Virus record (IMG/VR): IMGVR_UViG_3300028883_000032
Span: 124,001 to 188,000 of that record
DNA: 64,000 bases
Strand: one strand, 5' to 3'
The position numbers and the translations under genes were made by a program. The notes beneath the pieces were generated by a model. That model was not told where the DNA came from. It saw only the letters and a list, made by a program, of their open reading frames with translations, and did not search any database. Of the stretch, positions 2,203 through 17,130 are shown piece after piece; the first letter of the stretch is position 1, and each line of letters begins with the position of its first letter.

Positions 2203-2233
2203 TCAAGACTAGCGTATTTACGAGGACATCAAA

Positions 2234-3340: not shown

Positions 3341-3341
3341 C

Positions 3342-3616: not shown

Positions 3617-3663
3617 AAATAATCATTGACAGCCAAGAATTCATAAACATACTTTAAAGGAGT

Positions 3664-4542
3664 GTGGAGATGCTTTACGAGCAAGGACCGATAACGGAAC
3701 CAGTTCCCATTAACTTTGGAGCTATGTGGGAAGAATTAAAGCGTAAACCAAAAGTATTAAACCCGAAAGAGTCTACAATTCTTTTGGTAATTGACGCTCA
3801 AAATGGGTTTTGTTTGCCCAAACCTTGGGGACAGTTATACGTTCCGGGAGCGGAAAAAGACTGTGATCGCATTGCCAAGCTTATCCACACCAATGTGGAA
3901 AAGTTTAGCCAAATTGTGGCATCGATGGACAGGCATCTTATTATGGCGGCTTATCACCCGTCATTATGGGAAGATAATCCCGGGTTAAAATTCATACCTA
4001 AAGATAAGATTTTAGAACAAGCACGTAGGGACATACACACTGACCTACCAAGATCGTTGCCAACTCTTTTGGGGACACAGATTGGCATAGAGGGTGGAGT
4101 CATGGTATGGCCGTTTCATTGTTTGGGTATGGATACAAGTTCAGCACTACACCCCGCAGTTTTAGAGGCTATCACTTATTTTGCAATGGCCAAACGTGAA
4201 GAACCAATGTGGATAGAAAAAGGTACAGGTGCCTTTGCTCACCCATATTCCCCATTTCATCCAATTGTTGCTATGAGTAACATTGTTTACGGCCGTATCC
4301 AAGACACAGTTCTAAAAGCAAAGAGAATTGTGGTTGTAGGGGAAGCATCTACCCACTGTGTTCACGATACAATAGCTGACCTAGTTCCGCAACTGGAAGA
4401 AAGCACAGAGCTCATTGTATTAGAAGACTGCATGAGTCCCATACCCGGTTTCGAACAACAATGGGAGGATTTGAAAAATGAAATTTCCGGAAAAACAAGA
4501 GCCAAGGTCATCTTCACCACATCGTCCGTATTGGTTCTTTAA
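3664..4542 (+). CDS. pncA: nicotinamidase (isochorismatase/cysteine hydrolase fold)
   Basis: LLVIDAQNGF, GQLYVPGAE, WPFHC, IEKG and GEASTHCV give the D-K-C catalytic triad. Confidence 0.85.
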   Translation: MEMLYEQGPITEPVPINFGAMWEELKRKPKVLNPKESTILLVIDAQNGFCLPKPWGQLYVPGAEKDCDRIAKLIHTNVEKFSQIVASMDRHLIMAAYHPSLWEDNPGLKFIPKDKILEQARRDIHTDLPRSLPTLLGTQIGIEGGVMVWPFHCLGMDTSSALHPAVLEAITYFAMAKREEPMWIEKGTGAFAHPYSPFHPIVAMSNIVYGRIQDTVLKAKRIVVVGEASTHCVHDTIADLVPQLEESTELIVLEDCMSPIPGFEQQWEDLKNEISGKTRAKVIFTTSSVLVL

Positions 4543-4987
4543 ACCAATATATTCCATCATTCTTGTACTACTAGTAATTTTTTCACTAGTAGTATTTATG
4601 GTAGGAACGCGTTCCCTCAAAGACAAAACAATCGATGGAGTAGTTGTAATACCACACCATCAACCGGAAGGTCAGTATCATTATTCGGTAAGGTATGACA
4701 CACTAATAGCTTTTACTGCCCACGATGACAGTGTAAAAATTGTTTTTGCTACAACATGGCCAGCTGACCTTGATTCCATTTCCCTTAACTCACTCCACCG
4801 ACAGGCAATTATGTCTCTACTGGCGGAGTGTACCCAACACACTAAATATTGGTTTAAAAGCGGAAAAATTTATAAATGTAGTCGGATAGAGCAAGCAACC
4901 AATAGAAGGTTAAAGAAGTTTTGCAAGACACAACACTCTCCTCCTATAATTATTACAGTATTGCGGGCCTATTCTTTAAGCCCATAA
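4478..4987 (+). CDS. hypothetical protein with N-terminal TM segment
   Basis: ORF track; hydrophobic IILVLLVIFSLVVFMV. Confidence 0.55.
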   Translation: MKFPEKQEPRSSSPHRPYWFFKPIYSIILVLLVIFSLVVFMVGTRSLKDKTIDGVVVIPHHQPEGQYHYSVRYDTLIAFTAHDDSVKIVFATTWPADLDSISLNSLHRQAIMSLLAECTQHTKYWFKSGKIYKCSRIEQATNRRLKKFCKTQHSPPIIITVLRAYSLSP

Positions 4988-5002
4988 TCGTGGGCTTTTT
5001 TT
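4978..5002 (+). terminator. intrinsic terminator
   Basis: AAGCCC-ATAATCGT-GGGCTT followed by a T run. Confidence 0.65.
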
Positions 5003-5013
5003 ACCTTAAATAC

Positions 5014-5022
5014 GGAATAAGA
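5014..5022 (+). promoter_or_regulatory. GGHATAAGA promoter-like motif (GGAATAAGA)
   Basis: Directly after a terminator, upstream of the pgpA-like gene. Confidence 0.6.
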
Positions 5023-5055
5023 AATTATGGTACAAAAAACCGGGAGGTGGGTGTG

Positions 5056-5547
5056 GTGACCGAAATAAAGCCGTGGAAAGTGTGGCTTGTACGTGTAGTA
5101 GGCACTGGTTTTGGTATTGGGTATTTAAGGGGCGCAGGGACAATAGGGAGTGCTGTTGTTTCAGTGGTTTGGTGCCTATTATACCCATTACTTACGGTGT
5201 ATACTCAAATCACCGTATTAGCCTGGTTGGTACTACTAACTGTATTCACGGGGGACACAGCCGAGGAATTATGGGGAGCATGGAATACAAGCCGGGTCAA
5301 CCTTGGTAAATGGACGGGCATGTGGATTGTATTGATGTGCATACCTTATAACATATTCATCTACCTGTTTGCCTTTGCGGTTTTTCGTTGTTTCGACATG
5401 CTAAGAACCCTTCCCCCAACCAAATGGATGAACACCCACCTATCAGCCGGTTTGGGAATACTCTTAACTGATATACTAGCGGCAATATATACTATTATTA
5501 GCGTCAGGGTAAGCATAGCCATTGGCTTTCTTATAATGGGTGGCTAG
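5056..5547 (+). CDS. phosphatidylglycerophosphatase A (PgpA)-like membrane protein, catalytic acidic residues degenerate
   Basis: GTGFGIGY..GAGTIGS, FAVFRCFDMLRTLPP, GLGILLTDILAAIY; GTG start 5056 after GGAGG (ORF track starts at 4921). Confidence 0.7.
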   Translation: MTEIKPWKVWLVRVVGTGFGIGYLRGAGTIGSAVVSVVWCLLYPLLTVYTQITVLAWLVLLTVFTGDTAEELWGAWNTSRVNLGKWTGMWIVLMCIPYNIFIYLFAFAVFRCFDMLRTLPPTKWMNTHLSAGLGILLTDILAAIYTIISVRVSIAIGFLIMGG

Positions 5548-5568
5548 TAACCATACTCGGGAGACGTT

Positions 5569-5706
5569 ATGGATAATAATGTTGACGTTGAGAAAGAAGC
5601 AATCCTTTCTCAATTTCAGAATGGTGGGTTAGACCCACTCACGTTTGAAGCGCAGATGGCTCGCCTCGAAGCCAAGCATCGACCATTAGACGAAGATGGT
5701 GAGTAG
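5569..5706 (+). CDS. small acidic protein (45 aa)
   Basis: Hand-translated MDNNVDVEKEAILSQFQNGG...; GGAG upstream; ends before a terminator. Confidence 0.5.
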   Translation: MDNNVDVEKEAILSQFQNGGLDPLTFEAQMARLEAKHRPLDEDGE

Positions 5707-5711
5707 CAAAT

Positions 5712-5740
5712 ATCGCCCTTAATCGGGGCGGTATTTTTTT
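5712..5740 (+). terminator. intrinsic terminator, followed by the motif variant GGAATATGA (5741-5749)
   Basis: ATCGCCCT-TAATC-GGGGCGGT plus T7. Confidence 0.7.
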
Positions 5741-5779
5741 GGAATATGAATATAATAAACAAACTTTAAGGGAATAAAA

Positions 5780-6088
5780 ATGCAAGAAGGCTCACAGTTA
5801 CGTAATAGTGACATGGATACTCCCGACTGTGATATCTCAGAAGATTGGAATCCAACGCCCGTCATTAGTTCTTTTCAGTTTACTTTTACTCAAGACGGCA
5901 ATACACTAGGAACTACTAAAGAATTTGAAACTATCACAATAAAAACTGAGTATCAGATCCCCGGTGAATATCCGTTTTTTGTAATTGAAACAGAGGGATG
6001 GAGTGTAGATTCGGTAAAAGACTTGGAGACCCTGTTTAAAAATTTCCTGCATGTGGTAAAACATGCGATGGGGGAAGATAAAATCTAA
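5780..6088 (+). CDS. hypothetical protein (102 aa)
   Basis: ORF track. Confidence 0.65.
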   Translation: MQEGSQLRNSDMDTPDCDISEDWNPTPVISSFQFTFTQDGNTLGTTKEFETITIKTEYQIPGEYPFFVIETEGWSVDSVKDLETLFKNFLHVVKHAMGEDKI

Positions 6089-6094
6089 AGAGAC

Positions 6095-6565
6095 TTGGAG
6101 GAAATCATGGTAATAATTCTCATATTAATCATCTTAATTTTAGTGGTCTTACTAATTATATCATTAATAGCACATTCAAATACCAAGGAACAGGCAGAGA
6201 TAAACGAACTGAAAAAAGAACAGATAATACAAAACTTGCATGACTTAACAGATAGATATACCAACCTTAAAGTTCCCGACAATCAGGCTTCTCTACTCGG
6301 AAAAAAAATCTTGGTTACGGCCACAGTAATTGGTGAATATGGTGATCCAACAGCAAGGGAGCTCGTCGTTAAAATCAACGGACCTAAAGGGTATAAAGAG
6401 ATAAAACTTAATCAATATGTATTAAGGTATAGGCCAACCATGTATTGTTGTGGTAGTCGGTATCCGGATAAAAGCAACCCAATGGTGTTTGAATATATAG
6501 CATCTGAAAAAATAAGGCCCATCAAAAGCAGTGGGAGCTTTCAACAGGCCCTGGAGGAGGGTTAA
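6095..6565 (+). CDS. membrane-anchored hypothetical protein
   Basis: N-terminal hydrophobic helix; GGAGG upstream of ATG 6107. Confidence 0.65.
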   Translation: MEEIMVIILILIILILVVLLIISLIAHSNTKEQAEINELKKEQIIQNLHDLTDRYTNLKVPDNQASLLGKKILVTATVIGEYGDPTARELVVKINGPKGYKEIKLNQYVLRYRPTMYCCGSRYPDKSNPMVFEYIASEKIRPIKSSGSFQQALEEG

Positions 6566-6641
6566 TTAAGTATACATCAAATACTTGAAAAAATCAAGTA
6601 GGTTGTGTATATTTGTTTATCAACAAGAGGCGCGGTATATA

Positions 6642-6902
6642 ATGCCAACTTATACTTATAAATGTGAAGTTTGTGGGATTGAATCTGACCATTTTCATTC
6701 CATGAATTCAGAACCAGTAAATGTTTGTCCTGTCTGTAAGTCTGAAGGTAAGATGGAGAAATTAATAGGGCATAGCGTTTCTTTCATCTTTAAAGGGCAC
6801 GGTACCCACGACTCGGACAAAAGAATACGAATGCTTCAAGAGGAGGCTGCAAAAGGAAATGATGATCCTGAAAAGGGGTACAATATGACATTTGGAGCTT
6901 AA
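6642..6902 (+). CDS. FmdB-family zinc-ribbon protein
   Basis: MPTYTYKCEVCG...VCPVCKS...KLI...FIFKG.G is the FmdB pattern. Confidence 0.8.
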   Translation: MPTYTYKCEVCGIESDHFHSMNSEPVNVCPVCKSEGKMEKLIGHSVSFIFKGHGTHDSDKRIRMLQEEAAKGNDDPEKGYNMTFGA

Positions 6903-6903
6903 T

Positions 6904-7125
6904 ATGCCGTATGTAAATCCAAAATATCCTGAAACCTTCGTCAAACCAAGCAGAGTGCGGAGGTGGAAGCACAGTAGTAAGTTCAGGTTTTGTGAATCTG
7001 AGCCTTACAGACGAAGGGGAGATTTTGATGGAAGAAGTGTCAAATCCTCAGTTACAAGGCAAAAGTGGCCTATGTTATCAAAACCAAAAAGAAACCTGAT
7101 ACCAGAAATAGACAAATGGAATTAA
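6904..7125 (+). CDS. hypothetical basic protein
   Basis: ORF track (6892..7125); GGAG upstream of ATG 6904. Confidence 0.45.
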   Translation: MPYVNPKYPETFVKPSRVRRWKHSSKFRFCESEPYRRRGDFDGRSVKSSVTRQKWPMLSKPKRNLIPEIDKWN

Positions 7126-7406
7126 ACGAAAATCTAAATTTTCCCCTGTTTGAAAATGAGAAAGCTATGTTGGCTAATGGGAGAATAGGGGAAGAACAAA
7201 GACAGTATAATCATATTATGAAATCATGCATACAGGGGTATGATAGAGATATAAGACTAAAAAGCCAGACTATGACGTATGTCCCTATTCCTGATGATTA
7301 TTTTGAAGATGTAGTTTTGAAAGTAAGAGACCATATACGCAAGCAAGGGTGGCACTGTGAGTTGGAATCTGAGCTAGGGGCTGGTCTTATTATTCAAATA
7401 CCATAA
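7065..7406 (+). CDS. hypothetical protein
   Basis: ORF track; C-terminal helix-GW-strand-strand pattern. Confidence 0.6.
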   Translation: MAYVIKTKKKPDTRNRQMELNENLNFPLFENEKAMLANGRIGEEQRQYNHIMKSCIQGYDRDIRLKSQTMTYVPIPDDYFEDVVLKVRDHIRKQGWHCELESELGAGLIIQIP

Positions 7407-7443
7407 CAAAAATACACACTTAAGTAGCTACCATTGGTTATAT

Positions 7444-7515
7444 TGGGGTGTAGCCAAGTGGTACGGCATCGGACTTTGAATCCGATATTCGTGGGTTCGA
7501 ATCCCACCACCCCAT
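7444..7515 (+). tRNA. tRNA-Gln(TTG), CCA not encoded
   Basis: Acceptor TGGGGTG/CACCCCA, anticodon arm TCGGA-CTTTGAA-TCCGA, T arm GTGGG-TTCGAAT-CCCAC. Confidence 0.93.
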
Positions 7516-7535
7516 CACGCACTTTTGAGGAGAAA

Positions 7536-7928
7536 ATGGCAAAACAAAGTTTTATTATGCAGGCTTTTTGCAGCGACGAAATTGATGTATGGGATATGGA
7601 AAAAAGTGTTCTAGCCCAATGTTGTGAGGAAACCTGCGATAGTTGGGATACTATTCCTTCTGTTATGCAAACCCTTCTTATGGAAGGTAGTGAAGTAATG
7701 GAGCTTGGAAAGAGAAAGCTAGTAAGATTCTCGACTGACCCGCTTACACTCGTTTTACATAGACTACGCAACAACATTTGGATGTTTGAGCTACTTGATG
7801 CCGAAGATTACTCTACTGGAGAGACATACTTCTTCAAGGTGGAACAGTTGGAAGTAGCAAATGAAGTAGCATATAAATTACTGGTAGAGTACGAAGTTTT
7901 GGACGAGCTAAAAACTGAAGAAGACTGA
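7536..7928 (+). CDS. hypothetical acidic protein (MAKQSF...)
   Basis: ATG 7536 after GAGGAG; the longer 7434 start would run through the tRNA. Confidence 0.7.
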   Translation: MAKQSFIMQAFCSDEIDVWDMEKSVLAQCCEETCDSWDTIPSVMQTLLMEGSEVMELGKRKLVRFSTDPLTLVLHRLRNNIWMFELLDAEDYSTGETYFFKVEQLEVANEVAYKLLVEYEVLDELKTEED

Positions 7929-7983
7929 TTTTTATGGCAAAAGAAGATGACTTGAAATAATCTACTTAAAACGGAGTTTATTT

Positions 7984-8271
7984 ATGGCAGAGAAAAAAAC
8001 AAGGCATCAAGCTAAGAATGCGAGAAGATTGGCATACAAGTCTTCAGGTCAGGATGAAAAGAATAAAGAAAGACGAATTGTAAATTCAGTGTATTCTTTA
8101 GCTTTGGCTTTTGCTAAGAAAAATTGTTACGCTAATCATAAAGACTCCGAAGCTCGCAAAAAGCTAAAAAATAAAATACGTGCTTTGGTTTCTAAAACAC
8201 GTATCAGTCATCCCGAGCAATCGGTGTGGGTAAAAGATAACAGAGACTCAATATGTGAGCCTCTAAGATAG
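7984..8271 (+). CDS. hypothetical basic protein (95 aa)
   Basis: ORF track; GGAG upstream. Confidence 0.65.
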   Translation: MAEKKTRHQAKNARRLAYKSSGQDEKNKERRIVNSVYSLALAFAKKNCYANHKDSEARKKLKNKIRALVSKTRISHPEQSVWVKDNRDSICEPLR

Positions 8272-8279
8272 GAGGGGAT

Positions 8280-8498
8280 ATGCTAATGTCAGGATTGATT
8301 GATCCGGACGAAACCGTCCCATGTAAAAATCCAAAAAGAGGCAAGCCTCCCGTGTTTTACTCACTCGAAAAATTACAAGAATTATCTGAACATGGGCGCA
8401 CTATCATATATCACCCATCAAATCCGTGCGAACCAATCCCGCAAGACGAAAGGGATCATTATTTTCCCAATTGTCTTCCATCAGACTTGATGGGTTAG
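8280..8498 (+). CDS. hypothetical protein (72 aa)
   Basis: AGGAGG SD before ATG 8280. Confidence 0.6.
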   Translation: MLMSGLIDPDETVPCKNPKRGKPPVFYSLEKLQELSEHGRTIIYHPSNPCEPIPQDERDHYFPNCLPSDLMG

Positions 8499-8522
8499 AA
8501 CAAATCGAGAGACGACATGTCA

Positions 8523-8564
8523 CCCTCTGAAGAGAATGTAGTGCGCATAGATTCTCTTCAGGGG
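8523..8564. other. strong intergenic hairpin (possible RNA processing or regulatory site)
   Basis: CCCTCTGAAGAGAAT / ATTCTCTTCAGGGG stem, 13-nt loop. Confidence 0.6.
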
Positions 8565-8587
8565 ACTCTCATTTTCGGAGCACAATT

Positions 8588-8941
8588 ATGGCAACCAATT
8601 TAGGGCAACTACTAAGAATTAATGAAGTCGATGATCTGACGGACTGGATCAATGGTACAAACGAGTTGGAATTAAATGATGTAGAGTGGCCAGCCCCGCT
8701 AATGGTTTTAATTTTAGATGGCGCGACCGTTTTAGACTCAATACCTGTGGAAGAGCTGCCAGAGGGGTTTAAACAATCTGGAAGAATAGTAATTTACAGG
8801 TTGCGTGATGGGTCTGTACTCGAAATGAGTGAGGGTAACTCTGAATTTAGCCCAGAAGTATATTATTATTCTGCGGCTGAATGGCGGGCCATCGAGGAGC
8901 ATGCCGCCGAATTATTAAATGCGGCTTCCGAGGCCTCATAG
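8588..8941 (+). CDS. hypothetical acidic protein (117 aa)
   Basis: ORF track; GGAG upstream. Confidence 0.7.
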   Translation: MATNLGQLLRINEVDDLTDWINGTNELELNDVEWPAPLMVLILDGATVLDSIPVEELPEGFKQSGRIVIYRLRDGSVLEMSEGNSEFSPEVYYYSAAEWRAIEEHAAELLNAASEAS

Positions 8942-8949
8942 GAGGCAAA

Positions 8950-9093
8950 ATGTACTACGAACTTACGGATATGTTAATGTCGGTGTTTTTACACTACCCC
9001 GCATTAATATTGCAATACATGTATGAAGTATATAAAATGAATAGAATTAACATTGAAAGGCTTAAGCGACAATGGTTAGTGAAGGAGCAGTAG
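8950..9093 (+). CDS. small hypothetical protein (47 aa)
   Basis: AGGAGG SD before ATG 8950. Confidence 0.5.
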   Translation: MYYELTDMLMSVFLHYPALILQYMYEVYKMNRINIERLKRQWLVKEQ

Positions 9094-9353
9094 TAACTGA
9101 CAGAGTAGATCACTATGAAGTGATCAATTCTAATACAGTGTCAAGAACCTTGGATTTAAAAAGTCTGTCTACCGGAAAAATCCGCAGAAATCAACCAATT
9201 GGAAACTTCCAAGTTTTGGTTAGCGGGCGCAGGGAGACAGCAGCGGTTATCCGCCCAGAGGTAAGGTCATTTGGCACAGAACCAACATACCCGTTACACT
9301 ATGGTAGAGAACGGGCTACACAGAATGAAACTACGAAACGAGGAAAAGAAGGA

Positions 9354-10241
9354 ATGTTCGGAAGATCTTTTGAAAATCTCTTTAATTTGAATTTTGGTCC
9401 CGTGCACGGCGACCAGTTCAAAATCGCAATGACCCCGCAGGGTCCAAGAGTTGCAATTAAGAATAATGAAGGCGATTATCTCACGTTCGACGCGGAAAAT
9501 GAATCGCTGTTCAACGTTCTCAACTTTGCATTTGGTGGAAGGGATATGTTCTACATGGTCCCGGTAACGGAAGAAGGTATCAACCCCGGCGACGTCGTAC
9601 TCGTCAAGGGAAAGCCTGTTTTCCTCCATCACGTAATGGAAAATGGTAACTGGCGTGTAATTAACCCCGCTTCCAGCGCGGTTCATACACACATCAATCC
9701 GCAGAATATTCTCGGATTCCGCATCTTTACCAAGATTGTTTCAATCTCTGAGGTATTTGGTGCAGTTAACCCAGCCGAGGGCATGGATCTCGCTGGCAAT
9801 CCGCTGTTGGCCATGGCAATGATTGGAGAAGGCGGCATCGGTGAAAGCAACATGCTCAACATGCTTCTCTTAACCGGCCAGCTTAATCAGGGCGGTGACC
9901 AGAACGGTCTCATCAACTTGTTACTCATGAGCCAGCTTGTCGGGCGTGATAACGGGCGTGGTTTTGACCCGAAGATGCTGCTCTTAATGGGCGGAAATCT
10001 TGGCAACATCAATCCGATGATGCTTCTCGCCATGAGCGAAGGTGAATTTGGAATGAAAGACATGTTGCTGTTCAATGCACTGGGCGGACAAAAGGGTGAA
10101 GGAGCAGGAAACCTTTTCGGAAACTTTAAGTTCCCGTCATTCGCTGCCCCGGCACCGGCAGAAACTGATGCCAAACCGGCACCTGCCAAGAAAGCACCTG
10201 CCAAGAAAGCACCTGCCAAGAAAGCACCTGCCAAGAAGTAA
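9354..10241 (+). CDS. Gly/Met-rich conserved-type phage protein with a (PAKKA)4 histone-like tail
   Basis: MFGRSF start after GAAGGA; repeated NPMMLLAM-type helices; ORF track start is 9072. Confidence 0.75.
   Translation: MFGRSFENLFNLNFGPVHGDQFKIAMTPQGPRVAIKNNEGDYLTFDAENESLFNVLNFAFGGRDMFYMVPVTEEGINPGDVVLVKGKPVFLHHVMENGNWRVINPASSAVHTHINPQNILGFRIFTKIVSISEVFGAVNPAEGMDLAGNPLLAMAMIGEGGIGESNMLNMLLLTGQLNQGGDQNGLINLLLMSQLVGRDNGRGFDPKMLLLMGGNLGNINPMMLLAMSEGEFGMKDMLLFNALGGQKGEGAGNLFGNFKFPSFAAPAPAETDAKPAPAKKAPAKKAPAKKAPAKK
10179..10238 (+). repeat. 15-nt tandem repeat x4 (GCACCTGCCAAGAAA) encoding APAKK
   Basis: Read directly; the last copy ends in AAG. Confidence 0.95.
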
Positions 10242-10263
10242 TTTGGCAAATAACGATGTATAG

Positions 10264-10294
10264 AGTGGCCCCTTCGGGGGCCACTTATTTTTTT
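10264..10294 (+). terminator. intrinsic terminator
   Basis: AGTGGCCCC-TTCG-GGGGCCACT plus a T run. Confidence 0.9.
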
Positions 10295-10302
10295 AATTGG
10301 TT

Positions 10303-10375
10303 GCCCCTGTAGCTCAATGGATAGAGCGGGGGCCTTCTAAGCCTCAGGTTGTAGGTTCGAGCCCTACCAGGGGTA
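10303..10375 (+). tRNA. tRNA-Arg(TCT), CCA not encoded
   Basis: Acceptor GCCCCTG/CAGGGGT, D arm GCTC/GAGC, anticodon loop CTTCTAA, T arm GTAGG-TTCGAGC-CCTAC. Confidence 0.93.
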
Positions 10376-10386
10376 CTGGAGGAGAT

Positions 10387-10851
10387 ATGTGGTTGGTAGT
10401 CTGTCTAATTGTAGGATATCTCGGCCTTTGGGGCCTGTGGGTATCAATGAAAAAAGACTCGGAAACTCTTTTCGCAGTGTCATTAATTATCTTAGTCGCT
10501 TTCACAATACTGTTAATAGTAGGAGTGGTACAAATTTTTGATATAGTACCCAGCACCGATGTTAAGTATTCGTCGGAACCTTCAGTACGTTCTGAATTAC
10601 TGGATGCACTGCCATCAGGAACTCAAACCGAAACATTTGACAATGGTATGTTAATGGTTACTATCGACCCTGATAGTGCATCACACTCTGAATATTTGAG
10701 GTTCGATAATAAGTATGAGTATTGGGTAGAGGACTTTTACACCCCGCTTAACAAAGCCTACTCTAGATCGGTAAGTGGCTGGTATGGTGTTTTTATAAAG
10801 GATAGGCCGAAAATAAATTATATTGAAGTTGTAACAAAAGGTTGGAAATAA
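10387..10851 (+). CDS. membrane protein (two N-terminal TM segments)
   Basis: ATG 10387 after GGAGGAG; the 10297 start overlaps the tRNA. Confidence 0.7.
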   Translation: MWLVVCLIVGYLGLWGLWVSMKKDSETLFAVSLIILVAFTILLIVGVVQIFDIVPSTDVKYSSEPSVRSELLDALPSGTQTETFDNGMLMVTIDPDSASHSEYLRFDNKYEYWVEDFYTPLNKAYSRSVSGWYGVFIKDRPKINYIEVVTKGWK

Positions 10852-10856
10852 TACAT

Positions 10857-11186
10857 ATGAATAAAACAATTAATTTAAACATGTATGTGCATGTAATTCG
10901 GCATCTTCGAACTCTAAACGGGGATCCGTATGCTACGTTTGTGGCAATTTACCACCCAGCACATAATAAAATTACCTATGGTTGGGCTATTTCCCATGCC
11001 GAATTAGACACATTCTCTTCGAAGGATGGAGTTCAAATAGCTTTAGGAAGAGCCATTGCCAATAGACACGATCTTCTTGACAAAAAACATTTCATCCCGC
11101 CCGACTTGAGAACCTCTCTTCCAGATGCATGGAAAGATTTTCAAGAATATGCGTATGAACGTATCAATAAAGCAAGAACCAAGTAA
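10857..11186 (+). CDS. conserved-type phage hypothetical protein
   Basis: GWA.S..LDTFSSKDG..IALGRA pattern common in phage small proteins. Confidence 0.65.
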   Translation: MNKTINLNMYVHVIRHLRTLNGDPYATFVAIYHPAHNKITYGWAISHAELDTFSSKDGVQIALGRAIANRHDLLDKKHFIPPDLRTSLPDAWKDFQEYAYERINKARTK

Positions 11187-11198
11187 GGAAAATATCCT

Positions 11199-11456
11199 AT
11201 GGAGTTCTTAAAAAAGCTTTGGGTTGCGATTTCACACTCTTTAATTTTTGAAGTGTGGATAACTTTCAAAAAAATAACACAACTTGGCATTGAAGACCTG
11301 TTTATACTTATATTATTTGCCATAATAGGGGCAATTCTGTTATGGTTGGCCTTCTTCATTCTGAAGATTTTTATTCCCATTATAGGTGCCATTTTAGGTC
11401 TCTACTTTGGGATTAAGTTTCTTCTTGAATACAACGAAAAAGTAAAGAAGGAATAG
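11199..11456 (+). CDS. small membrane protein (85 aa)
   Basis: Hydrophobic segments; AAGGA upstream. Confidence 0.65.
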   Translation: MEFLKKLWVAISHSLIFEVWITFKKITQLGIEDLFILILFAIIGAILLWLAFFILKIFIPIIGAILGLYFGIKFLLEYNEKVKKE

Positions 11457-11655
11457 TTTACCTCCCGAGGGTCCCGTCCCGCTAGACTATGGGCCTCATG
11501 CATTCGTATCATCGTTAGGACAACCTTTAATTTCCACCTAATTCAGGAGGGTATCATGGAATACCCATCAGGTTTTGGTTAGTTAAAAAAAATACTACTA
11601 ACAAGAAAAAATTAAAGGTAAAACATCGATCTTTTTAATCTCGTGTAGAAGTACG

Positions 11656-11703
11656 ATTTTCCCATGTGCATGGAATGTATCCGTGGCATGGGAAAATTTT
11701 TTT
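11656..11703 (+). terminator. long hairpin/terminator
   Basis: ATTTTCCCATG / CATGGGAAAAT plus a T run. Confidence 0.65.
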
Positions 11704-11715
11704 ATCCTAAAACAT

Positions 11716-11724
11716 GGAATAAGA
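11716..11724 (+). promoter_or_regulatory. GGHATAAGA promoter-like motif
   Basis: Between the terminator and the cca gene. Confidence 0.6.
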
Positions 11725-11753
11725 CCTAAACTAACAGTTTACGGGAGATTGCA

Positions 11754-13415
11754 ATGTCTAAAAGAACACAAGCCCTTGTTCGAGCCATCAGTGCGGCAGG
11801 CGGACACGCGTTTTACACCGGTGGTTGGGTTAGGGATAAGGCTATGGGTATTCCGACCTCTGGAGATCTGGACATAGAGGTATATGGGCTTTCGAAAGAA
11901 GAATTGGAGGAAGTGCTGAAGCCATGGAATCCCGATCATGTGGGTAAGAGCTTTGGAGTTTTTAAGCTGAATGGTCTGCATGGCATTGATGTCTCCCTAC
12001 CCCGCAAGGATACTCAAGTAGACCCAAAAGATCATAAAGCTGTAATAGTCACTTATGATTCCAAGATGTCTACAAAAGAAGCATGCTTCCGTCGTGATTT
12101 TACGATGAATTCCATGTTGTTTGATCCTCTCCAAGAGAAAATTATTGATCATTGGGGAGGCCTCGTTGATATAAAGCGAGGTCAGATAAGAATGGTTTCT
12201 GAGCATTTCGGGGACGACCCATTGCGTGCATTAAGGGCTATAAAGTTTATGACCCGCACAGGATTTTCTTTGGAACCAAAAACAGCAGAAACTGTTCGAA
12301 AAATGAATACCTCTAAATTGCCCGCCGAAAGAATTTGGGGAGAGCTTTCGGACATGCTGGCAAAAGGAATATATTGGATAGATGCCTTAAACACATTAGT
12401 ATCCAGTGTCACAGGCAAATTCTGGTTTCCAGAACTTGTCGCATTGCACGGCTTGGAACAAGACCCAAGTTGGCACCCAGAGGGAGACGTGCTTACTCAT
12501 ACCGCGTTGGTGGTACAAGCAGCCTCTCAAATGAAAATTCCCAAAGACAAGAAGGTAAAATTTATGTTGGCAGCATTACTTCATGACTTGGGAAAAGCAA
12601 AAACAACGATACACAAAGATGGGCATATTAAAAGCCCTCTTCATGACCGCGTGTCCGCTGAGTTGGCCGAAGTACTTATGACCAGGTTACACGTGTCAAA
12701 AGAAATACAGAAATATGTGGTACCGATGGTGAGAAACCACATGTGGGCAGTTAGCTCCATGCCACATGGAAAGGAAGCCAAAGTTAGTGATGGTAAAATA
12801 CGCAAACTTTCTACTAAGGTTCCCAGCATCGACGATCTTATGGATTTGGCGGTGGCAGATAAAATGGGAACGACTGATGCTAGACTTAAGACCGAAACTT
12901 TGGATCATATCGAGTCAATTAGACAACGTGCTCGAAAGCTTAAGGTCCTTCATGCGGCTCCTAAGCCCATTATACAAGGTAGGCATCTTATTGATTTTGT
13001 TACTCCTGGTCCTCAGATGGGCGAGATACTCGCATGGTGTTACGAACAGCACCTGAATGGTAAAGTAACAAGCCCAGAACAGGGAATTGCCTTGTGGTGT
13101 AAACATCATAACCAAAAATTTGTAAAAGTCGGGTTCATACCGGGAGACGTACGCGGATTAATGTTGTCGTCAGATGCAACTGTGGCGCAGGTTATTTCGG
13201 CGGGACTAGTACCCACTGTCTATAACGAAGTACTGGTGCATCCAAGGCATGTAAAAATATCAAGTATCGGAGAGGATACCTACAAAAGCTGTAGTTTGTC
13301 CGATGTCCCTCGCCACATGGATAGAATATTGATTTTGGGAGTGCCTACAACTCCAAGCATGAAGTGGCAAGAAGGATTAAAAGAGCTCCTTGGGAGCCTT
13401 AAAACCACCGACTGA
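11754..13415 (+). CDS. cca: class II tRNA nucleotidyltransferase (CCA-adding type) with HD domain
   Basis: GGWVRD, DLDIE, RRDFTMN, DDPLRALR, ERIWGE, HPEGDVLTHT, LLHDLGK. Confidence 0.9.
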   Translation: MSKRTQALVRAISAAGGHAFYTGGWVRDKAMGIPTSGDLDIEVYGLSKEELEEVLKPWNPDHVGKSFGVFKLNGLHGIDVSLPRKDTQVDPKDHKAVIVTYDSKMSTKEACFRRDFTMNSMLFDPLQEKIIDHWGGLVDIKRGQIRMVSEHFGDDPLRALRAIKFMTRTGFSLEPKTAETVRKMNTSKLPAERIWGELSDMLAKGIYWIDALNTLVSSVTGKFWFPELVALHGLEQDPSWHPEGDVLTHTALVVQAASQMKIPKDKKVKFMLAALLHDLGKAKTTIHKDGHIKSPLHDRVSAELAEVLMTRLHVSKEIQKYVVPMVRNHMWAVSSMPHGKEAKVSDGKIRKLSTKVPSIDDLMDLAVADKMGTTDARLKTETLDHIESIRQRARKLKVLHAAPKPIIQGRHLIDFVTPGPQMGEILAWCYEQHLNGKVTSPEQGIALWCKHHNQKFVKVGFIPGDVRGLMLSSDATVAQVISAGLVPTVYNEVLVHPRHVKISSIGEDTYKSCSLSDVPRHMDRILILGVPTTPSMKWQEGLKELLGSLKTTD

Positions 13416-13432
13416 CAATCTGAAGCGGTGCT

Positions 13433-13480
13433 GCCTGGTACGCCGGGGACATGTTAACCTCTGTCCCCGGTAAGTCAGGC
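13433..13480. other. GC-rich intergenic hairpin with an internal loop
   Basis: GCCTG/CAGGC outer stem; CCGGGGACA/TGTCCCCGG inner stem. Confidence 0.6.
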
Positions 13481-13514
13481 TTTAATTTAACACTTAATTT
13501 AAGGGAGTGTAAAG

Positions 13515-13778
13515 ATGGAAAAATTACGAAATTATTGGTATTCGTATTGTGAAGCTATTCAAGATGCCGAAAGAACAGAGGGTAAAATTATTTCCACATC
13601 CTTGGTAATTATTACTCTTTTTATGATAGCTCTTGGTCTCATAGTAGTTTGGGAATTCCCCGGAACAGTAATAACAATTGCTGTAATAGTTATAGTTGTG
13701 GCAAAATTTAATGCATACATTTTGCAACAAGAGAGGCCTCGAGATGGAGATCGAAGTAAGGAAACATTACAAATTTAA
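13515..13778 (+). CDS. small membrane protein (87 aa)
   Basis: Two hydrophobic segments; GGGAG upstream. Confidence 0.65.
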   Translation: MEKLRNYWYSYCEAIQDAERTEGKIISTSLVIITLFMIALGLIVVWEFPGTVITIAVIVIVVAKFNAYILQQERPRDGDRSKETLQI

Positions 13779-14103
13779 ACAAACTTGCCCGTCATGTGGC
13801 GCTCGTTTGAGATCTTTTGTTCAGGAGCAGCAACACACCAATGGGTATTGGAACCAAATAGCCACCTATGAATGCGGGTATAAACTCCACTTTATACCCA
13901 ATTTCATGGGTGTACGGGTAGAATGCCGGTGTGAAAAATCCCCTGAAACTCTAGAAATCATAGAAAAGCGTAAAGAGGTGTTGGGTAGAGTCATTAACTA
14001 CGTGAGGAAGTTAAGGCTGGACGATCAGTACGCAGCCAAGATACTTCATGAGCTTGAACGTTTAGGTGAACCTCACAACATAACTCAAGGTATAAAGGTT
14101 TAA
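13744..14103 (+). CDS. zinc-finger hypothetical protein
   Basis: CPSCG ... YECG ... CRC; ATG 13744. Confidence 0.65.
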   Translation: MEIEVRKHYKFKQTCPSCGARLRSFVQEQQHTNGYWNQIATYECGYKLHFIPNFMGVRVECRCEKSPETLEIIEKRKEVLGRVINYVRKLRLDDQYAAKILHELERLGEPHNITQGIKV

Positions 14104-14125
14104 CAACCGATAGCGGAGATACATT

Positions 14126-15310
14126 ATGTGCAATGTAGTGACAGAACCAATCATAAAGTCAATTCTTGATAACGACTTATACAAGCTAAACATGCAACAG
14201 GCTGTTTGCCAGTTATACCCAAGGGCAGAAGCCGAATATAGGCTAATATTTCGTAGACCTGCAAAATTTACATATAAAATGATGCAGGAAATCTCTCAAG
14301 AAATACAGAACTTGTCAAAACTACAGCTAACAAGTGACGAAGAGTTGTTTCTTTCCACAACTTGCTACTATTTAACTCCGGTATATATTGAGTTTTTACG
14401 TGGGTTCAGATATGATCCTCGCCAAGTATCACTAAAATGGAATGAGGACAAGATAGATTTAAAAATCCATGGGCCTTGGTACCAATCGATAATGTGGGAA
14501 GTTGTACTTATGTCAATCATTTCTGAAGTTTATTTCAGACATGACACTACAAAAATCTATTCCCCCGAAGCAAGACGTGCAAATAATATTGAGAAGATTT
14601 CCAGACTTAAACAGCACGATATTCCCTTTGCAGAATTTGGAACCCGCCGTCGCCATTCTTATGCAATTCAAGAAGAATTCCTCAACCATGCCAGAGAATA
14701 TGGACCACCGCAATTTGTAGGAACTTCTAATGTACATTTTGCCCACAAATTAGACACAGTTCCAATAGGAACTACTGCCCATGAATGGTATATGTTCCAT
14801 GCAGCAAAATATGGCTATAAACTTGCCAATGTCATGGCTCTTAAGGCTTGGTCAAAAGTTTATAGAGGCCACATGGGGATTGCCCTTTCCGATACTTTTA
14901 CTACTAAAGCGTTTTTAGACGTATACGATACATACTGGGGAAAACTGTTTGATGGTGTAAGACAGGATTCCGGCGATCCTCTAAAATACTCTGATGATGT
15001 AATATCTCACTGGAGACATACTCGAGTAGACCCTGTCACCAAATCCATTGTATTTTCGGATGCTTTGAATATCGATAAGGCCATAGAGCTAAAGAGGTAT
15101 ATCGCCGATAGGTGTAGAATGTCTACCGGAATAGGTACCCATTTTACTAACGATGTTGGGGTAACTCCTCTTAACATGGTCATAAAGATGTCCAGAGCAA
15201 AACCTGAAAATATGCCATGGCAGAATACGGTTAAGCTCTCTGACAACATTGAAAAAGCCACTGGAGACGCCAGTGAGATTTCTTTTGCAAGGAGGGTATT
15301 GGGCGTATGA
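14126..15310 (+). CDS. pncB: nicotinate phosphoribosyltransferase
   Basis: LDNDLYKLNMQ, EFGTRRRHS, GTSNV, GTTAHEW, GVRQDSGDP, VFSDAL, GIGT, KLSD. Confidence 0.93.
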   Translation: MCNVVTEPIIKSILDNDLYKLNMQQAVCQLYPRAEAEYRLIFRRPAKFTYKMMQEISQEIQNLSKLQLTSDEELFLSTTCYYLTPVYIEFLRGFRYDPRQVSLKWNEDKIDLKIHGPWYQSIMWEVVLMSIISEVYFRHDTTKIYSPEARRANNIEKISRLKQHDIPFAEFGTRRRHSYAIQEEFLNHAREYGPPQFVGTSNVHFAHKLDTVPIGTTAHEWYMFHAAKYGYKLANVMALKAWSKVYRGHMGIALSDTFTTKAFLDVYDTYWGKLFDGVRQDSGDPLKYSDDVISHWRHTRVDPVTKSIVFSDALNIDKAIELKRYIADRCRMSTGIGTHFTNDVGVTPLNMVIKMSRAKPENMPWQNTVKLSDNIEKATGDASEISFARRVLGV

Positions 15311-15903
15311 ATAGTCGGATAGGAGTGTTTGGGGGATCTTTTGATCCCCCCGACAACGCTCACGGATACATAGCAGAGTATGTTCGCCAAGAGCTTAACT
15401 TTGATCGCATTATCTGGGTGCCAACACGTCAGAATCCCCAGAAACAGAAGGTAAAATCAACAATATTTGAGCGAATTCGAATGATCAGAATGGTCATAGA
15501 ATCGCTGGGATTAACAGAGTTTCATGGTTTAGACCAAAGGCAGTTATACAAAGATTTCCCCCACACTACTTACGGATTAATATCTTCCTTACAAAACGAC
15601 TTTTCACAGGACGAGTTGTTTCCAATCATTGGTTCTGATTGTGTAGAAAACTTTCCTAACTGGTCCGACTTTAACAAACTTGTGGGTATCTGTAAATTGG
15701 TTATTGTATGGAGACAACGAGAGAAACCCTCAGAGTTGGAATGTGAGGAGCTAAAAAAGTTTGGGGAATTAGTTATACCCGCTTGTAGCTTCGACATATC
15801 CTCTTCATGCATACGCAACATGGTAAAACATGCAAAGCCGATTAACGGATTGGTGCCCGATTCGGTAAGACGTTACATAAGAACAAGGAGGCTTTACAAG
15901 TGA
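15307..15903 (+). CDS. nadD: nicotinate-mononucleotide adenylyltransferase
   Basis: IGVFGGSFDPPDNAH, IIGSD, ISSSCIR, GLVPDSVRRYI; ATGA overlap with pncB. Confidence 0.88.
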   Translation: MNSRIGVFGGSFDPPDNAHGYIAEYVRQELNFDRIIWVPTRQNPQKQKVKSTIFERIRMIRMVIESLGLTEFHGLDQRQLYKDFPHTTYGLISSLQNDFSQDELFPIIGSDCVENFPNWSDFNKLVGICKLVIVWRQREKPSELECEELKKFGELVIPACSFDISSSCIRNMVKHAKPINGLVPDSVRRYIRTRRLYK

Positions 15904-16673
15904 ACAGCATTGAGATAAAGGGGCTTGAAATAATTGAACGCATTGGAGAATTTGTTGGAGACAAGCCCGTAGTAATTGGCTTGTCAGGTGGGGTAGACTC
16001 GGCATTAGTAGCCACAATGCTTTGTGATGCCCTGCCCTCCATCGACCACATTATTCCCGTATGCATGCCAAGCGACCAGTCACCTAGCCTCGATCAACAG
16101 TGTGTAGATGCTTTAGTAAAAGAATTGGGACTTAATGAGCCATTCACAATTCCCATTGGGGAATTGAATTCCGAATTCATTAAGCTCATTCTACGCACAA
16201 CGACTTATGACAAACCCACTGCCTTGGATCGCGGAAACCTGTCTGCACGACTACGGATGTCCATACTTTACTGGATTGCTGGCCACGTGAATGGCCTAGT
16301 GGCCGGTACAGGTAATCGTACCGAACATGAAATTGGTTATTTCACAAAATGGGGAGATGGTGCAAATGATTTTGAGCCCATTGCCAGCTTATGGAAATGT
16401 GAAGTTTATAGGTTAGCAAGGGCTTTGGGAGTTCCAGATATAATTCTCGATCGTCCTCCTTCAGCTTGTCTTTGGGAAGGTCAGACCGATGAAGAAGAAT
16501 TTGGGATGTCTTACGAGCAACTCGATCTACACCTTGATTGGCTGTCTGGAGACTACCATCCTTATACATGGTACCTTTCCAACAAGACAAAAATCAGTGT
16601 TGATACATTAAAACAGGTGATTCTCTTAAGGAATGGGTCTAGCCATAAAAAGCACATGCCACCAACGCTGTAA
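15900..16673 (+). CDS. nadE: NH3-dependent NAD+ synthetase
   Basis: GLSGGVDSA, NLSARLRM, GTGNRTE..IGYFTKWGDG, PPSACLWEGQTDE; no glutaminase domain. Confidence 0.93.
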   Translation: MNSIEIKGLEIIERIGEFVGDKPVVIGLSGGVDSALVATMLCDALPSIDHIIPVCMPSDQSPSLDQQCVDALVKELGLNEPFTIPIGELNSEFIKLILRTTTYDKPTALDRGNLSARLRMSILYWIAGHVNGLVAGTGNRTEHEIGYFTKWGDGANDFEPIASLWKCEVYRLARALGVPDIILDRPPSACLWEGQTDEEEFGMSYEQLDLHLDWLSGDYHPYTWYLSNKTKISVDTLKQVILLRNGSSHKKHMPPTL

Positions 16674-16692
16674 GAGAAAAACCATGAACAGT

Positions 16693-16720
16693 AAAGGGGG
16701 AACTTCGGTTCCCCCTTTTT
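16693..16720 (+). terminator. intrinsic terminator
   Basis: AAAGGGGGAAC-TTCG-GTTCCCCCTTT(TT). Confidence 0.9.
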
Positions 16721-16743
16721 AATTTTAATTTAGGAAAATAAAA

Positions 16744-17010: not shown

Positions 17011-17016
17011 TTAATA

Positions 17017-17106: not shown

Positions 17107-17130
17107 CATAACCGACAAAACGAGAAGATA

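What the first reader, a model, noticed from the sequence alone, without database searches (positions are those of the whole stretch)
3664..16673. Complete deamidating NAD+ salvage route (PncA, PncB, NadD, NadE) encoded by a phage
Seen: pncB-nadD-nadE form an overlapping operon (14126-16673) with its own terminator, and pncA lies at 3664-4542. Established: together they convert nicotinamide to nicotinate, NaMN, NaAD and NAD+. Defence systems with SIR2/TIR/SEFIR effectors cleave NAD+ to nicotinamide plus ADP-ribose. The phage NAD reconstitution pathways I know use amidated routes (Adps/Namat or Nampt/NMNAT). Inference: this may be a distinct four-step counter-defence route; the Nudix enzyme could recycle ADP-ribose towards PRPP.
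Basis: partly seen in the sequence, partly recalled or inferred. Interest (0 to 1): 0.65.

Follow-up and report, generated by a model that had tools for sequence, protein, structure and literature searches.

The report
Jumbo phage nicotinamide-to-NAD salvage genes
A 207-kb marine-sediment phage carries all four enzymes that turn nicotinamide back into NAD+ by the deamidating route, a gene set already reported by computation in other giant phages and still untested as a counter to NAD-depleting bacterial defences.

Summary
The window lies in a complete 206,856-bp jumbo myophage from a marine sediment metagenome. pncB (14126-15310), nadD (15307-15903) and nadE (15900-16673) overlap by four bases each, score above curated NCBIfam cut-offs and end at a strong terminator (16693-16718).

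The 'pncA' ORF (3664/3670-4542) falls below the Pfam and NCBIfam cut-offs. It nevertheless keeps the Asp-Lys-Cys triad and the DxH...H...WPxHC metal site of nicotinamidases. Its model matches solved nicotinamidases first, and relatives sit beside pncB in many large phages.

'NAD-jumbo phages' with pncB-nadD-nadE clusters, and the idea that they counter NAD+ depletion, were published in 2024. Among 80 PncB-bearing viral contigs I found PncA near pncB in 43, NadE in 39, NadD in 19 and all four in 6. Cultured phages Phosso and Atu_ph07 carry the parts too.

No experiment has tested the deamidating route against NADase defences.

Caveats:
- NadD has Asp where relatives have His, Thr or Ser in the HxGH motif.
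- The Nudix gene is generic. It is paired with a NADAR gene, and the phage has no PRPP synthetase.

Verdict: a real, well-formed new member of a known kind.

The parts
3670..4542 (+). pncA-like gene: long-form nicotinamidase candidate. The ORF opens at GTG 3664; the likely start is ATG 3670, giving 290 aa.
   Evidence: Pfam Isochorismatase and the NCBIfam nicotinamidase model score below their cut-offs. There are 1275 relatives among the representatives. Across 60 relatives the invariant residues are D44, D89, H91, W149, H152, K186 and C232. AF2 pLDDT is 85, and the top ten Foldseek PDB hits are all nicotinamidases. It aligns with canonical PncA encoded next to bacterial pncB. Relatives lie within 10 kb of pncB in 43 of 80 viral contigs.
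11716..11724 (+). Copy of the phage intergenic motif GGAATAAGA, with a T-rich tract upstream. Candidate promoter element 38 nt before the CCA-enzyme gene.
   Evidence: The genome holds 22 copies, at least 14 of them in intergenic regions, mostly 13-70 nt upstream of gene starts. The + strand has no strong terminator between this site and 16693; the one weak terminator-like match lies inside pncB. Promoter function is inferred.
11754..13415 (+). CCA-adding tRNA nucleotidyltransferase with HD domain. Probably the first gene of the transcription unit that ends with nadE.
   Evidence: PolyA_pol head 59.9 bits, HD 27.2 bits, NF008137 143.9 bits. Co-transcription is inferred from the absence of a strong terminator in between.
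13515..14103 (+). Two small ORFs of unknown function between the CCA-enzyme gene and pncB: an 87-aa ORF and a Cys-rich ORF of about 119 aa.
   Evidence: ORF list and sequence. No Pfam, NCBIfam or PHROG match for the second ORF.
14126..15310 (+). pncB, nicotinate phosphoribosyltransferase (394 aa).
   Evidence: NF003704 458 bits and TIGR01514 389 bits, both above cut-off. Best solved relative is 2im5, 291 bits, full length. The GTTAHEW motif is invariant among phage copies.
15307..15903 (+). nadD, nicotinate-mononucleotide adenylyltransferase (198 aa), with an unusual DNAH in place of the H/T-x-G-H motif.
   Evidence: TIGR00482 137 bits, above cut-off. Best solved relative is B. subtilis NadD 1kam. 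The ISSSCIR motif is present. Asp16 (GAC, 15352-15354) is unique among 12 homologs and about 15 phage NadDs and stands in the contig of the 44-fold-depth assembly.
15900..16673 (+). nadE, single-domain (ammonia-type) NAD+ synthetase (257 aa).
   Evidence: TIGR00552 204 bits and PF02540 207 bits. The SGGVDS P-loop is present. Best solved relatives are 2e18 and 3fiu.
16693..16718 (+). Intrinsic terminator closing the operon.
   Evidence: 11-bp stem with 6 G-C pairs, TTCG loop and a T run.
21267..21698 (+). NADAR-domain protein (143 aa), overlapping the Nudix gene by 11 nt.
   Evidence: PF08719 99.5 bits and TIGR02464 89.5 bits, both above cut-off.
21688..22170 (+). Nudix hydrolase (160 aa) of unresolved specificity.
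   Evidence: PF00293 43 bits. The Nudix box is intact. Nearest solved relatives are Ndx1, NUDT6 and Dcp2, and no NCBIfam model is near its cut-off.

Best explanation
The phage encodes a complete deamidating nicotinamide salvage pathway.

The steps are:
1. A long-form PncA deamidates nicotinamide to nicotinate and ammonia.
2. PncB joins nicotinate to host PRPP, with ATP, to give NaMN.
3. NadD adenylates NaMN to NaAD.
4. The ammonia-type NadE amidates NaAD to NAD+.

pncB-nadD-nadE are translationally coupled. They are probably transcribed from a phage promoter upstream of the CCA-adding enzyme gene and stop at the terminator after nadE. pncA lies 9.6 kb upstream in the same orientation.

Expressed during infection, the set would raise the flux from nicotinamide to NAD+ above what the host manages. 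This would keep NAD+ available when it is drained, most plausibly by SIR2, TIR or RES-type NADase defences that release nicotinamide.

Shown here: gene identities, motifs, operon anatomy, and recurrence in other large phages.
Inferred: enzyme activities, co-transcription with the CCA enzyme, timing, and the counter-defence role.
For: Family scores lie above curated cut-offs for PncB, NadD and NadE.

The PncA-like protein has the nicotinamidase-specific residues, fold and context.

The genes overlap by four bases and end at a terminator.

It is the sole NAD route in the genome.

Recurrence around pncB in 80 viral contigs: PncA 43, NadE 39, NadD 19, all four 6. One is a tight pncB-nadE-pncA-nadD operon (L145). 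Another lies in a complete 197.7-kb genome with terminal repeats.

Cultured jumbo phages Phosso and Atu_ph07 carry PncB with PncA-like, Nudix and NadE genes.

Phage PncBs sit on long basal branches and none nests inside a bacterial clade, so no recent capture from a sampled bacterium is seen.

A NADAR-Nudix pair and RNA-repair genes lie in the same region. This fits the NAD+/ADPr conflict neighbourhoods described in PMC9503650 and PMC7824862.

NAD+ rebuilding is a proven counter-defence for NARP1 and NARP2 (10.1101/2024.02.11.579819) and NARP3 (PMC13464706).
Against: There are no expression data: the only run holding the sequence is the probable source DNA run.

No known anti-defence gene lies next to the operon.

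The route needs PRPP and three ATP equivalents per NAD+, and it is the chemistry many hosts already have.

NadD carries Asp where all compared relatives have His, Thr or Ser, so its activity is uncertain.

PncA scores below the curated cut-offs.

pncA has no copy of the intergenic motif before it, so co-regulation with the operon is not shown.

The host is unknown.
Confidence: 0.6

Rival explanations
1. General metabolic booster, not a counter-defence. The pathway tops up NAD+ for the heavy redox and nucleotide metabolism of a jumbo-phage infection, or complements a host that lacks nicotinamide or nicotinate salvage, whether or not any NADase defence is present.
For: The phage carries other metabolic genes, such as RNR. 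PMC11662467 reports that phage and host NAD pathways often complement each other. By the review PMC13728456, NARP2 overproduces NAD+ even without a defence. No anti-defence gene is adjacent.
Against: The phage has no NAD-dependent DNA ligase and no Tpt1/KptA that would need extra NAD+. The neighbours are conflict-type genes: NADAR, Nudix, the CCA enzyme, RNA ligase and tRNAs. Starting from nicotinamide, the NADase product, fits recycling after cleavage. The two roles do not exclude each other.
Confidence: 0.3
2. The route is functionally incomplete or rewired. One form: the PncA-like protein hydrolyses another amide, leaving a three-step nicotinate (Preiss-Handler) pathway. Another form: NadD is crippled by Asp16, so the host NadD is used. 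A third form: NadE acts on NaMN (NMN synthetase, as I recall for Francisella NadE, PDB 3fiu) and NadD then adenylates NMN.
For: PncA is below the curated cut-offs and has an insertion of about 45 aa plus an N-terminal extension. Asp16 in NadD is unique. NadE's second-best solved relative is 3fiu. Many PncB phages lack NadD nearby (61 of 80).
Against: All catalytic and metal-binding residues of nicotinamidases are kept, and the WPxHC motif is present. The top structural hits are nicotinamidases, ranking above biuret, triuret and maleamate amidases. PncA-like genes sit directly beside pncB in other phages. The first position of the NadD motif already varies among H, T and S in phage enzymes, while the last His and the ISSxxxR motif are kept.
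Confidence: 0.15
3. Artefact: the NAD genes are bacterial DNA joined to a phage contig by misassembly, or the record is not a phage.
For: The genes have bacterial homologs at 45-51% identity. Only one sequencing run holds the sequence.
Against: Phage hallmark genes lie on both sides in one 206.9-kb contig rated 100% complete. A second assembler gives a 73-kb contig identical across 11600-17200 at even depth 44. Composition is even across the window. The phage-specific intergenic motif occurs before and after the operon. PncB lies on a long branch away from bacterial clades.
Confidence: 0.02

Closest known systems
'NAD-jumbo phages' with Preiss-Handler clusters (for example Kuafu_71, pncB-nadD-nadE; Microbiome 2024, PMC11662467)
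   Same: A jumbo phage with a clustered pncB, nadD and nadE. The proposal that phage-made NAD+ offsets host NAD+ depletion is the same, and it likewise rests on bioinformatics only.
   Different: This phage comes from marine sediment, not an animal gut. It adds a divergent long-form PncA 9.6 kb upstream, so the route starts at nicotinamide. The NadD motif is unusual. I could not compare sequences with Kuafu_71 because the paper's supplements are not held.
NARP2 / Vibrio phage KVP40 NadV-NatV (Nampt + Nmnat)
   Same: It starts from nicotinamide and PRPP, ends at NAD+, and is phage-encoded. NARP2 is experimentally shown to defeat NADase defences (10.1101/2024.02.11.579819).
   Different: NARP2 is two amidated steps via NMN. 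Here there are four steps via nicotinate, NaMN and NaAD, with release and re-addition of the amide nitrogen and a higher ATP cost. The genome has no Nampt-type gene.
NARP1 (Adps + Namat) and NARP3 (PnuC + NadR)
   Same: Phage pathways that rebuild NAD+ during infection.
   Different: NARP1 reuses ADP-ribose through a PRPS-like enzyme, and no PRPS-like gene is present here. NARP3 imports nicotinamide riboside (PMC13464706). I did not search this genome for PnuC or NadR.
Bacterial salvage pathway PncA-PncB-NadD-NadE
   Same: Identical chemistry and enzyme families. Some bacteria also place pncA directly after pncB, or have nadE-pncB-pncA.
   Different: Here the pathway is virus-encoded. PncB is only 45-51% identical to the nearest cellular copies. 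PncA belongs to a longer subfamily, roughly 240-350 aa, with an insertion between the metal-site motifs.
Cultured jumbo phages Sinorhizobium phage Phosso and Agrobacterium phage Atu_ph07
   Same: Phosso has NadE, PncB, a Nudix, an NMN adenylyltransferase and a PncA-like 'hydrolase' within 6 kb. Atu_ph07 has a PncA-like hypothetical protein, an ADP-ribose pyrophosphatase and PncB within 6 kb, with NadE elsewhere.
   Different: Their PncBs are only 30-32% identical and form a separate deep branch. Their PncA-like proteins are short-form. Phosso's adenylyltransferase is not NadD-like by my profile.

Membership tests
Nicotinamidase (PncA, isochorismatase-like hydrolase superfamily) | Score above the curated family cut-off (Pfam PF00857; NCBIfam NF008623) | tested here: not met
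   25.6 bits against 27, and 31.2 bits against 174. Only the N- and C-terminal parts match because of an insertion.
Nicotinamidase (PncA, isochorismatase-like hydrolase superfamily) | Catalytic Asp-Lys-Cys triad | tested here: met
   D44, K186 and C232 are invariant in 60 relatives and align with the triad of yeast Pnc1 and of bacterial PncA.
Nicotinamidase (PncA, isochorismatase-like hydrolase superfamily) | Metal site DxH...H plus the His of the WPxHC motif. By my knowledge of the solved enzymes, this distinguishes nicotinamidases from other isochorismatase-like hydrolases. | tested here: met
   D89, H91, H99 and W149-P150-x-H152-C153 are conserved in alignments with canonical PncA.
Nicotinamidase (PncA, isochorismatase-like hydrolase superfamily) | Fold closest to solved nicotinamidases | tested here: met
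   AF2 model pLDDT 85. Foldseek ranks 1-10 are nicotinamidases: A. baumannii (E 1e-12), yeast, P. horikoshii, Leishmania and Drosophila.
Nicotinamidase (PncA, isochorismatase-like hydrolase superfamily) | Hydrolysis of nicotinamide to nicotinate | not testable with these tools
   Needs an enzyme assay. Gene context with pncB in 43 of 80 viral contigs is indirect support.
Nicotinate phosphoribosyltransferase (PncB, ~400-aa E. coli/Salmonella-type family) | Full-length match above the equivalog cut-off, with both the N-terminal and the catalytic domain | tested here: met
   TIGR01514 389.5 bits against 269.55, NF003704 458 against 379, and PF17767 plus PF04095 both present.
Nicotinate phosphoribosyltransferase (PncB, ~400-aa E. 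coli/Salmonella-type family) | Conserved His of the ATP-coupled (phospho-His) mechanism in the GTxAHxW motif. That this His is the phosphorylated one is from memory of the Salmonella enzyme. | tested here: met
   G215-T-T-A-H219-E-W are present and invariant in seven phage copies.
NaMN adenylyltransferase (NadD) | Score above the equivalog cut-off | tested here: met
   TIGR00482 137.3 bits against 112.45.
NaMN adenylyltransferase (NadD) | (H/T)xGH and ISSTxxR nucleotidyltransferase motifs | tested here: inconclusive
   ISSSCIR is present. The first motif reads D-N-A-H: the last His is kept, but the first position is Asp, where 11 homologs have His and phage NadDs have H, T or S.
NAD+ synthetase (NadE, ammonia-dependent) | NAD_synthase domain above cut-off, SGGxDS P-loop, and no glutaminase (CN hydrolase) domain | tested here: met
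   TIGR00552 203.7 bits against 63.65. SGGVDS lies at residues 29-34. The protein is 257 aa and single-domain.
NAD+ synthetase (NadE, ammonia-dependent) | Preference for NaAD over NaMN | not testable with these tools
   The best solved relatives include both 2e18 and the Francisella enzyme 3fiu. Sequence alone does not decide.
Phage NAD+ reconstitution pathways (NARP-type counter-defence) | Phage-encoded enzymes that together make NAD+ from NADase products or imported precursors | tested here: met
   Four consecutive enzymes starting from nicotinamide are encoded in a complete phage genome.
Phage NAD+ reconstitution pathways (NARP-type counter-defence) | Restores NAD+ and phage growth in cells with an active NADase defence | not testable with these tools
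   No experiment, and no RNA run holds the sequence.
ADP-ribose pyrophosphatase (Nudix subfamily), as proposed for the Nudix gene | Match to an ADPR-specific Nudix family | tested here: not met
   Only the generic NUDIX domain matches. All NCBIfam equivalogs are far below their cut-offs, and the nearest solved chains are Ndx1, NUDT6 and Dcp2.

The most novel reading that the evidence does not exclude
The deamidating four-enzyme set is a true fourth phage NAD+ reconstitution pathway. When an NADase defence fires, PncA pulls the released nicotinamide into nicotinate, and its ammonia can feed NadE. The coupled PncB-NadD-NadE operon then rebuilds NAD+ fast enough to rescue replication. Because the set needs only nicotinamide and PRPP, it would also work against defences such as aRES that spoil ADP-ribose for NARP1. 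The neighbouring NADAR-Nudix pair and the co-transcribed CCA-adding enzyme would make this region a combined island for NAD+/ADP-ribose handling and RNA repair.
Probability: 0.35. Interest if true: 0.6.

Novelty: new member of a known kind. Interest (0 to 1): 0.38.

Why it matters
NAD+ depletion is one of the commonest abortive-infection strategies. Three phage pathways that rebuild NAD+ have been proven, and all are amidated or import-based.

The deamidating route is the one most bacteria themselves use. It is now seen repeatedly in large phages, yet nobody has tested whether a viral copy can outrun an NADase.

This genome offers a compact, complete and apparently intact example for such a test. 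It also offers an uncharacterised long-form nicotinamidase family that is frequent in giant phages. If the test fails, the genes are better read as metabolic helpers, which also bears on how jumbo phages gain independence from host metabolism.

Tried and rejected
- Megablast of the operon against 50,697 phage records found no match. The phage has no close sequenced relative there.
- The first genome-contig scan with the single PncB found nothing. The second, with an alignment, worked.
The host remains unknown. The nearest cellular PncBs are Desulfobacterota and Bacteroidota at 45-51% identity.
- The supplements of PMC11662467 are not held, so I could not count its Preiss-Handler phages or compare with Kuafu_71.
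- I searched the genome for phage NAD+ consumers or alternative routes and found none of these: NAD-dependent ligase, Tpt1/KptA, PRPP synthetase/Adps-like, Macro, or a second NAPRTase/Nampt. I did not search for SIR2, ADP-ribosyltransferases, PnuC or NadR.
- The six viral contigs first fetched through PncB share only a few distant genes with this phage, so lineage-level gain or loss of the NAD genes could not be traced.
- The careful PncB tree did not finish in the time allowed. Only the quick tree was used, and many phage rows are long branches, so no donor is claimed.
- No RNA run holds the operon, so expression is unknown.
- I looked for a shared promoter motif before pncA and the operon. 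The GGAATAAGA motif precedes the CCA-enzyme gene but not pncA.
- I considered and rejected assembly chimera.

Full report
WHAT THE WINDOW IS

The window is bases 124001-188000 of a single 206,856-bp IMG/VR virus record that CheckV rates as 100% complete. The genome encodes a terminase large subunit, a tail sheath, a baseplate wedge protein, a family-A DNA polymerase and a ribonucleotide reductase. It is therefore a jumbo myophage. G+C is 39.6% and even across the window.

The only public run that holds the operon is a marine sediment metagenome, probably the source sample, and no RNA run holds it. Logan's separate assembly of that run gives a 73-kb contig at depth 44 with no difference over 11600-17200. 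The operon is therefore not an assembly join. This is the same sample, not independent support.

THE OBSERVATION

- PncB (14126-15310) scores 458 bits on NF003704 (cut-off 379) and 389 bits on TIGR01514 (cut-off 269).
- NadD (15307-15903) scores 137 bits on TIGR00482 (cut-off 112).
- NadE (15900-16673) scores 204 bits on TIGR00552 (cut-off 64). It is a 257-aa single-domain enzyme, so ammonia-dependent.

The pncB stop and the nadD start share ATGA. nadD and nadE overlap by four bases. A strong hairpin with a T run follows at 16693-16718.

Alignments to solved enzymes show the expected motifs. PncB has GTTAHEW, and this is invariant in seven phage copies. NadE has the SGGVDS P-loop. NadD has ISSSCIR.

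THE WEAK LINK, pncA

The ORF at 3664-4542 more likely starts at ATG 3670, behind a GGAG. It is below the Pfam and NCBIfam cut-offs because only its ends match the models.

I spent the single large representative search on it. It has 1275 relatives at E <= 1e-3, and the 150 best hits are mostly about 240-350 aa. Sources that name them call them 'nicotinamidase-related amidase'. In an alignment of 60 relatives the invariant residues are D44, D89, H91, W149, H152, K186 and C232. These are the Asp-Lys-Cys triad and the DxH / WPxHC metal site of nicotinamidases, as the alignment with yeast Pnc1 and with canonical bacterial PncA shows.

The AlphaFold model has pLDDT 85 and pTM 0.83. It hits solved nicotinamidases at ranks 1-10, ahead of biuret, triuret and maleamate amidases.

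Gene context agrees:
- In a 293-kb viral contig the order is nadE-pncB-pncA(long form) with a 3-nt gap.
- Some bacteria place a short PncA directly after pncB.
- A PncA-type gene lies within 10 kb of pncB in 43 of 80 viral contigs.

I take the nicotinamidase assignment as likely (about 0.85) but unproven.

AN ODDITY IN NadD

The nucleotidyltransferase motif reads GGSFDPP-D-N-A-H. The first position is His in all 11 nearest homologs and His, Thr or Ser in about 15 phage NadD-like proteins. Asp is seen only here.

The codon is GAC, one base from a His codon, and it stands unchanged in the contig of the 44-fold-depth assembly. The invariant last His is kept. The effect on activity cannot be judged from sequence.

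SURROUNDINGS

The intergenic motif GGAATAAGA, preceded by a T-rich tract, occurs 22 times in the genome, mostly 13-70 nt before gene starts. One copy lies 38 nt before the CCA-adding enzyme gene (11754-13415).

The scan finds no strong + strand terminator between that site and 16693; the only weak match lies inside pncB. The likely transcription unit is therefore CCA enzyme - two small ORFs - pncB - nadD - nadE. This is inference. pncA has no such motif before it.

Downstream lie:
- a NADAR-domain gene (21267-21698; PF08719 99.5 bits) that overlaps the Nudix gene (21688-22170) by 11 nt;
- an RNA ligase (24587-25570);
- three tRNAs and a tmRNA.

The Nudix box is intact, but no specific Nudix family is matched. 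The genome has no PRPP synthetase or Adps-like gene, no Macro domain, no second NAPRTase/Nampt-family gene, no NAD-dependent ligase and no Tpt1.

The deamidating route is thus the only NAD route the phage encodes, and PRPP must come from the host. The pairing with NADAR points to ADP-ribose processing, as discussed for phages in PMC9503650.

HOW COMMON IT IS

By tblastn, PncB occurs in huge metagenomic phages (LR756500, LR756501, LR756511), in Atu_ph07 and in Phosso. NadE is widespread in large phages.

Phosso has NadE, PncB, a Nudix, an NMN adenylyltransferase and a PncA-like 'hydrolase' within 6 kb. Atu_ph07 has a PncA-like hypothetical protein, an ADP-ribose pyrophosphatase and PncB within 6 kb.

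A profile scan of IMG/VR found 234 PncB-encoding viral stretches. In the 80 best, within 10 kb of pncB, the counts are:
- PncA in 43
- NadE in 39
- NadD in 19
- all four in 6
- a CCA enzyme in 7
- an RNA ligase in 8

One contig has a tight pncB-nadE-pncA-nadD operon (L145). Another four-gene locus lies in a complete 197.7-kb genome with terminal repeats.

The nearest cellular PncBs, from Desulfobacterota and Bacteroidota, are 45-51% identical. In a quick tree the phage copies sit on long basal branches and none nests in a bacterial clade. No recent capture from a sampled bacterium is seen, and no donor is claimed.

WHAT IS KNOWN

- NARP1 (Adps + Namat) and NARP2 (Nampt + Nmnat) are proven counter-defences. 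That paper does not mention nicotinate, PncA, PncB or NadE (10.1101/2024.02.11.579819).
- NARP3 is PnuC + NadR (PMC13464706).
- Comparative surveys proposed phage NAD+ synthesis as a counter to NADases but described the amidated enzymes (PMC7824862, PMC9503650).
- PMC11662467 reports that 174 of 668 gut jumbo phages encode a complete salvage or Preiss-Handler pathway. It names a pncB-nadD-nadE cluster (Kuafu_71), mentions phage pncA and suggests counter-defence, all by bioinformatics.

I found no paper that tests the deamidating route experimentally.

VERDICT

The counter-defence role is plausible by analogy and by neighbourhood, but it is not shown. A general NAD+-boosting role is a serious rival and is not exclusive of it.

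The finding is a new, clean member of a kind already described in silico. Its value is as a test case for a possible fourth NAD+ reconstitution pathway and for the long-form phage nicotinamidase family.

Noticed in passing
window 21267-22170: A NADAR-domain gene (PF08719 99.5 bits; TIGR02464 above cut-off) overlaps a generic Nudix gene by 11 nt. This ADP-ribose-processing pair lies 4.6 kb downstream of nadE.
   Followed up: partly
window 5014, 11716, 22887, 25573, 26733, 28769, 35784 (22 copies in the genome): The intergenic motif GGAATAAGA, preceded by a T-rich tract, lies mostly 13-70 nt upstream of gene starts, including upstream of the CCA-enzyme gene and the tmRNA gene. It is probably part of a phage-specific promoter.
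   Followed up: partly
window 26804-27167: A phage-encoded tmRNA with the unusual tag peptide GETPVLKAA, 71 nt downstream of a copy of the motif.
   Followed up: no
window 37377-38306 and 38777-38851: A retron-type reverse transcriptase (NF038233 retron St85 family, 223.6 bits, just under the cut-off of 235) inside a jumbo phage. A tRNA-like gene with an 8-base anticodon loop (ataa) lies about 470 nt downstream.
   Followed up: no
window 15352-15354: NadD has Asp (GAC) at the first position of the H/T-x-G-H motif. All compared homologs have His, Thr or Ser there. The Asp codon stands in the contig of the 44-fold-depth assembly.
   Followed up: yes
window 11754-13415, 24587-25570, 7444-7516, 10303-10376, 17017-17106: RNA-repair and translation genes are interleaved with the NAD genes: a CCA-adding enzyme with HD domain, a DRB0094-type RNA ligase, and three tRNAs. 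CCA enzymes or RNA ligases also lie near pncB in 15 of 80 other viral contigs.
   Followed up: partly
window 3342-3660: Three tandem small ORFs just before pncA, each beginning with nearly the same 20-odd bases (ATGAAAATAAT-A/C-ATTGACA...). They look like a small paralogous membrane-protein family.
   Followed up: no
window 29628-35768 (- strand), 29054-29614, 25701-26048, 4921-5547: A 2046-aa ORF of unknown function, a NYN-domain nuclease, a T5orf172/MUG113 protein and a PgpA-like phosphatidylglycerophosphatase.
   Followed up: no
L121 (Phosso PV764938, locus 3590-9231) and L120 (Atu_ph07, locus 368-6266): In these cultured jumbo phages, proteins annotated 'hydrolase' or 'hypothetical protein' beside PncB carry the nicotinamidase signature residues. 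The deposited annotations therefore under-report a PncA step.
   Followed up: partly
L008 (IMG contig Ga0268262_10000013, 205 kb) and L013: A conserved trio, PP2C-like phosphatase - ~600-aa unknown protein - long-form PncA, recurs in two other large phage-like contigs.
   Followed up: no
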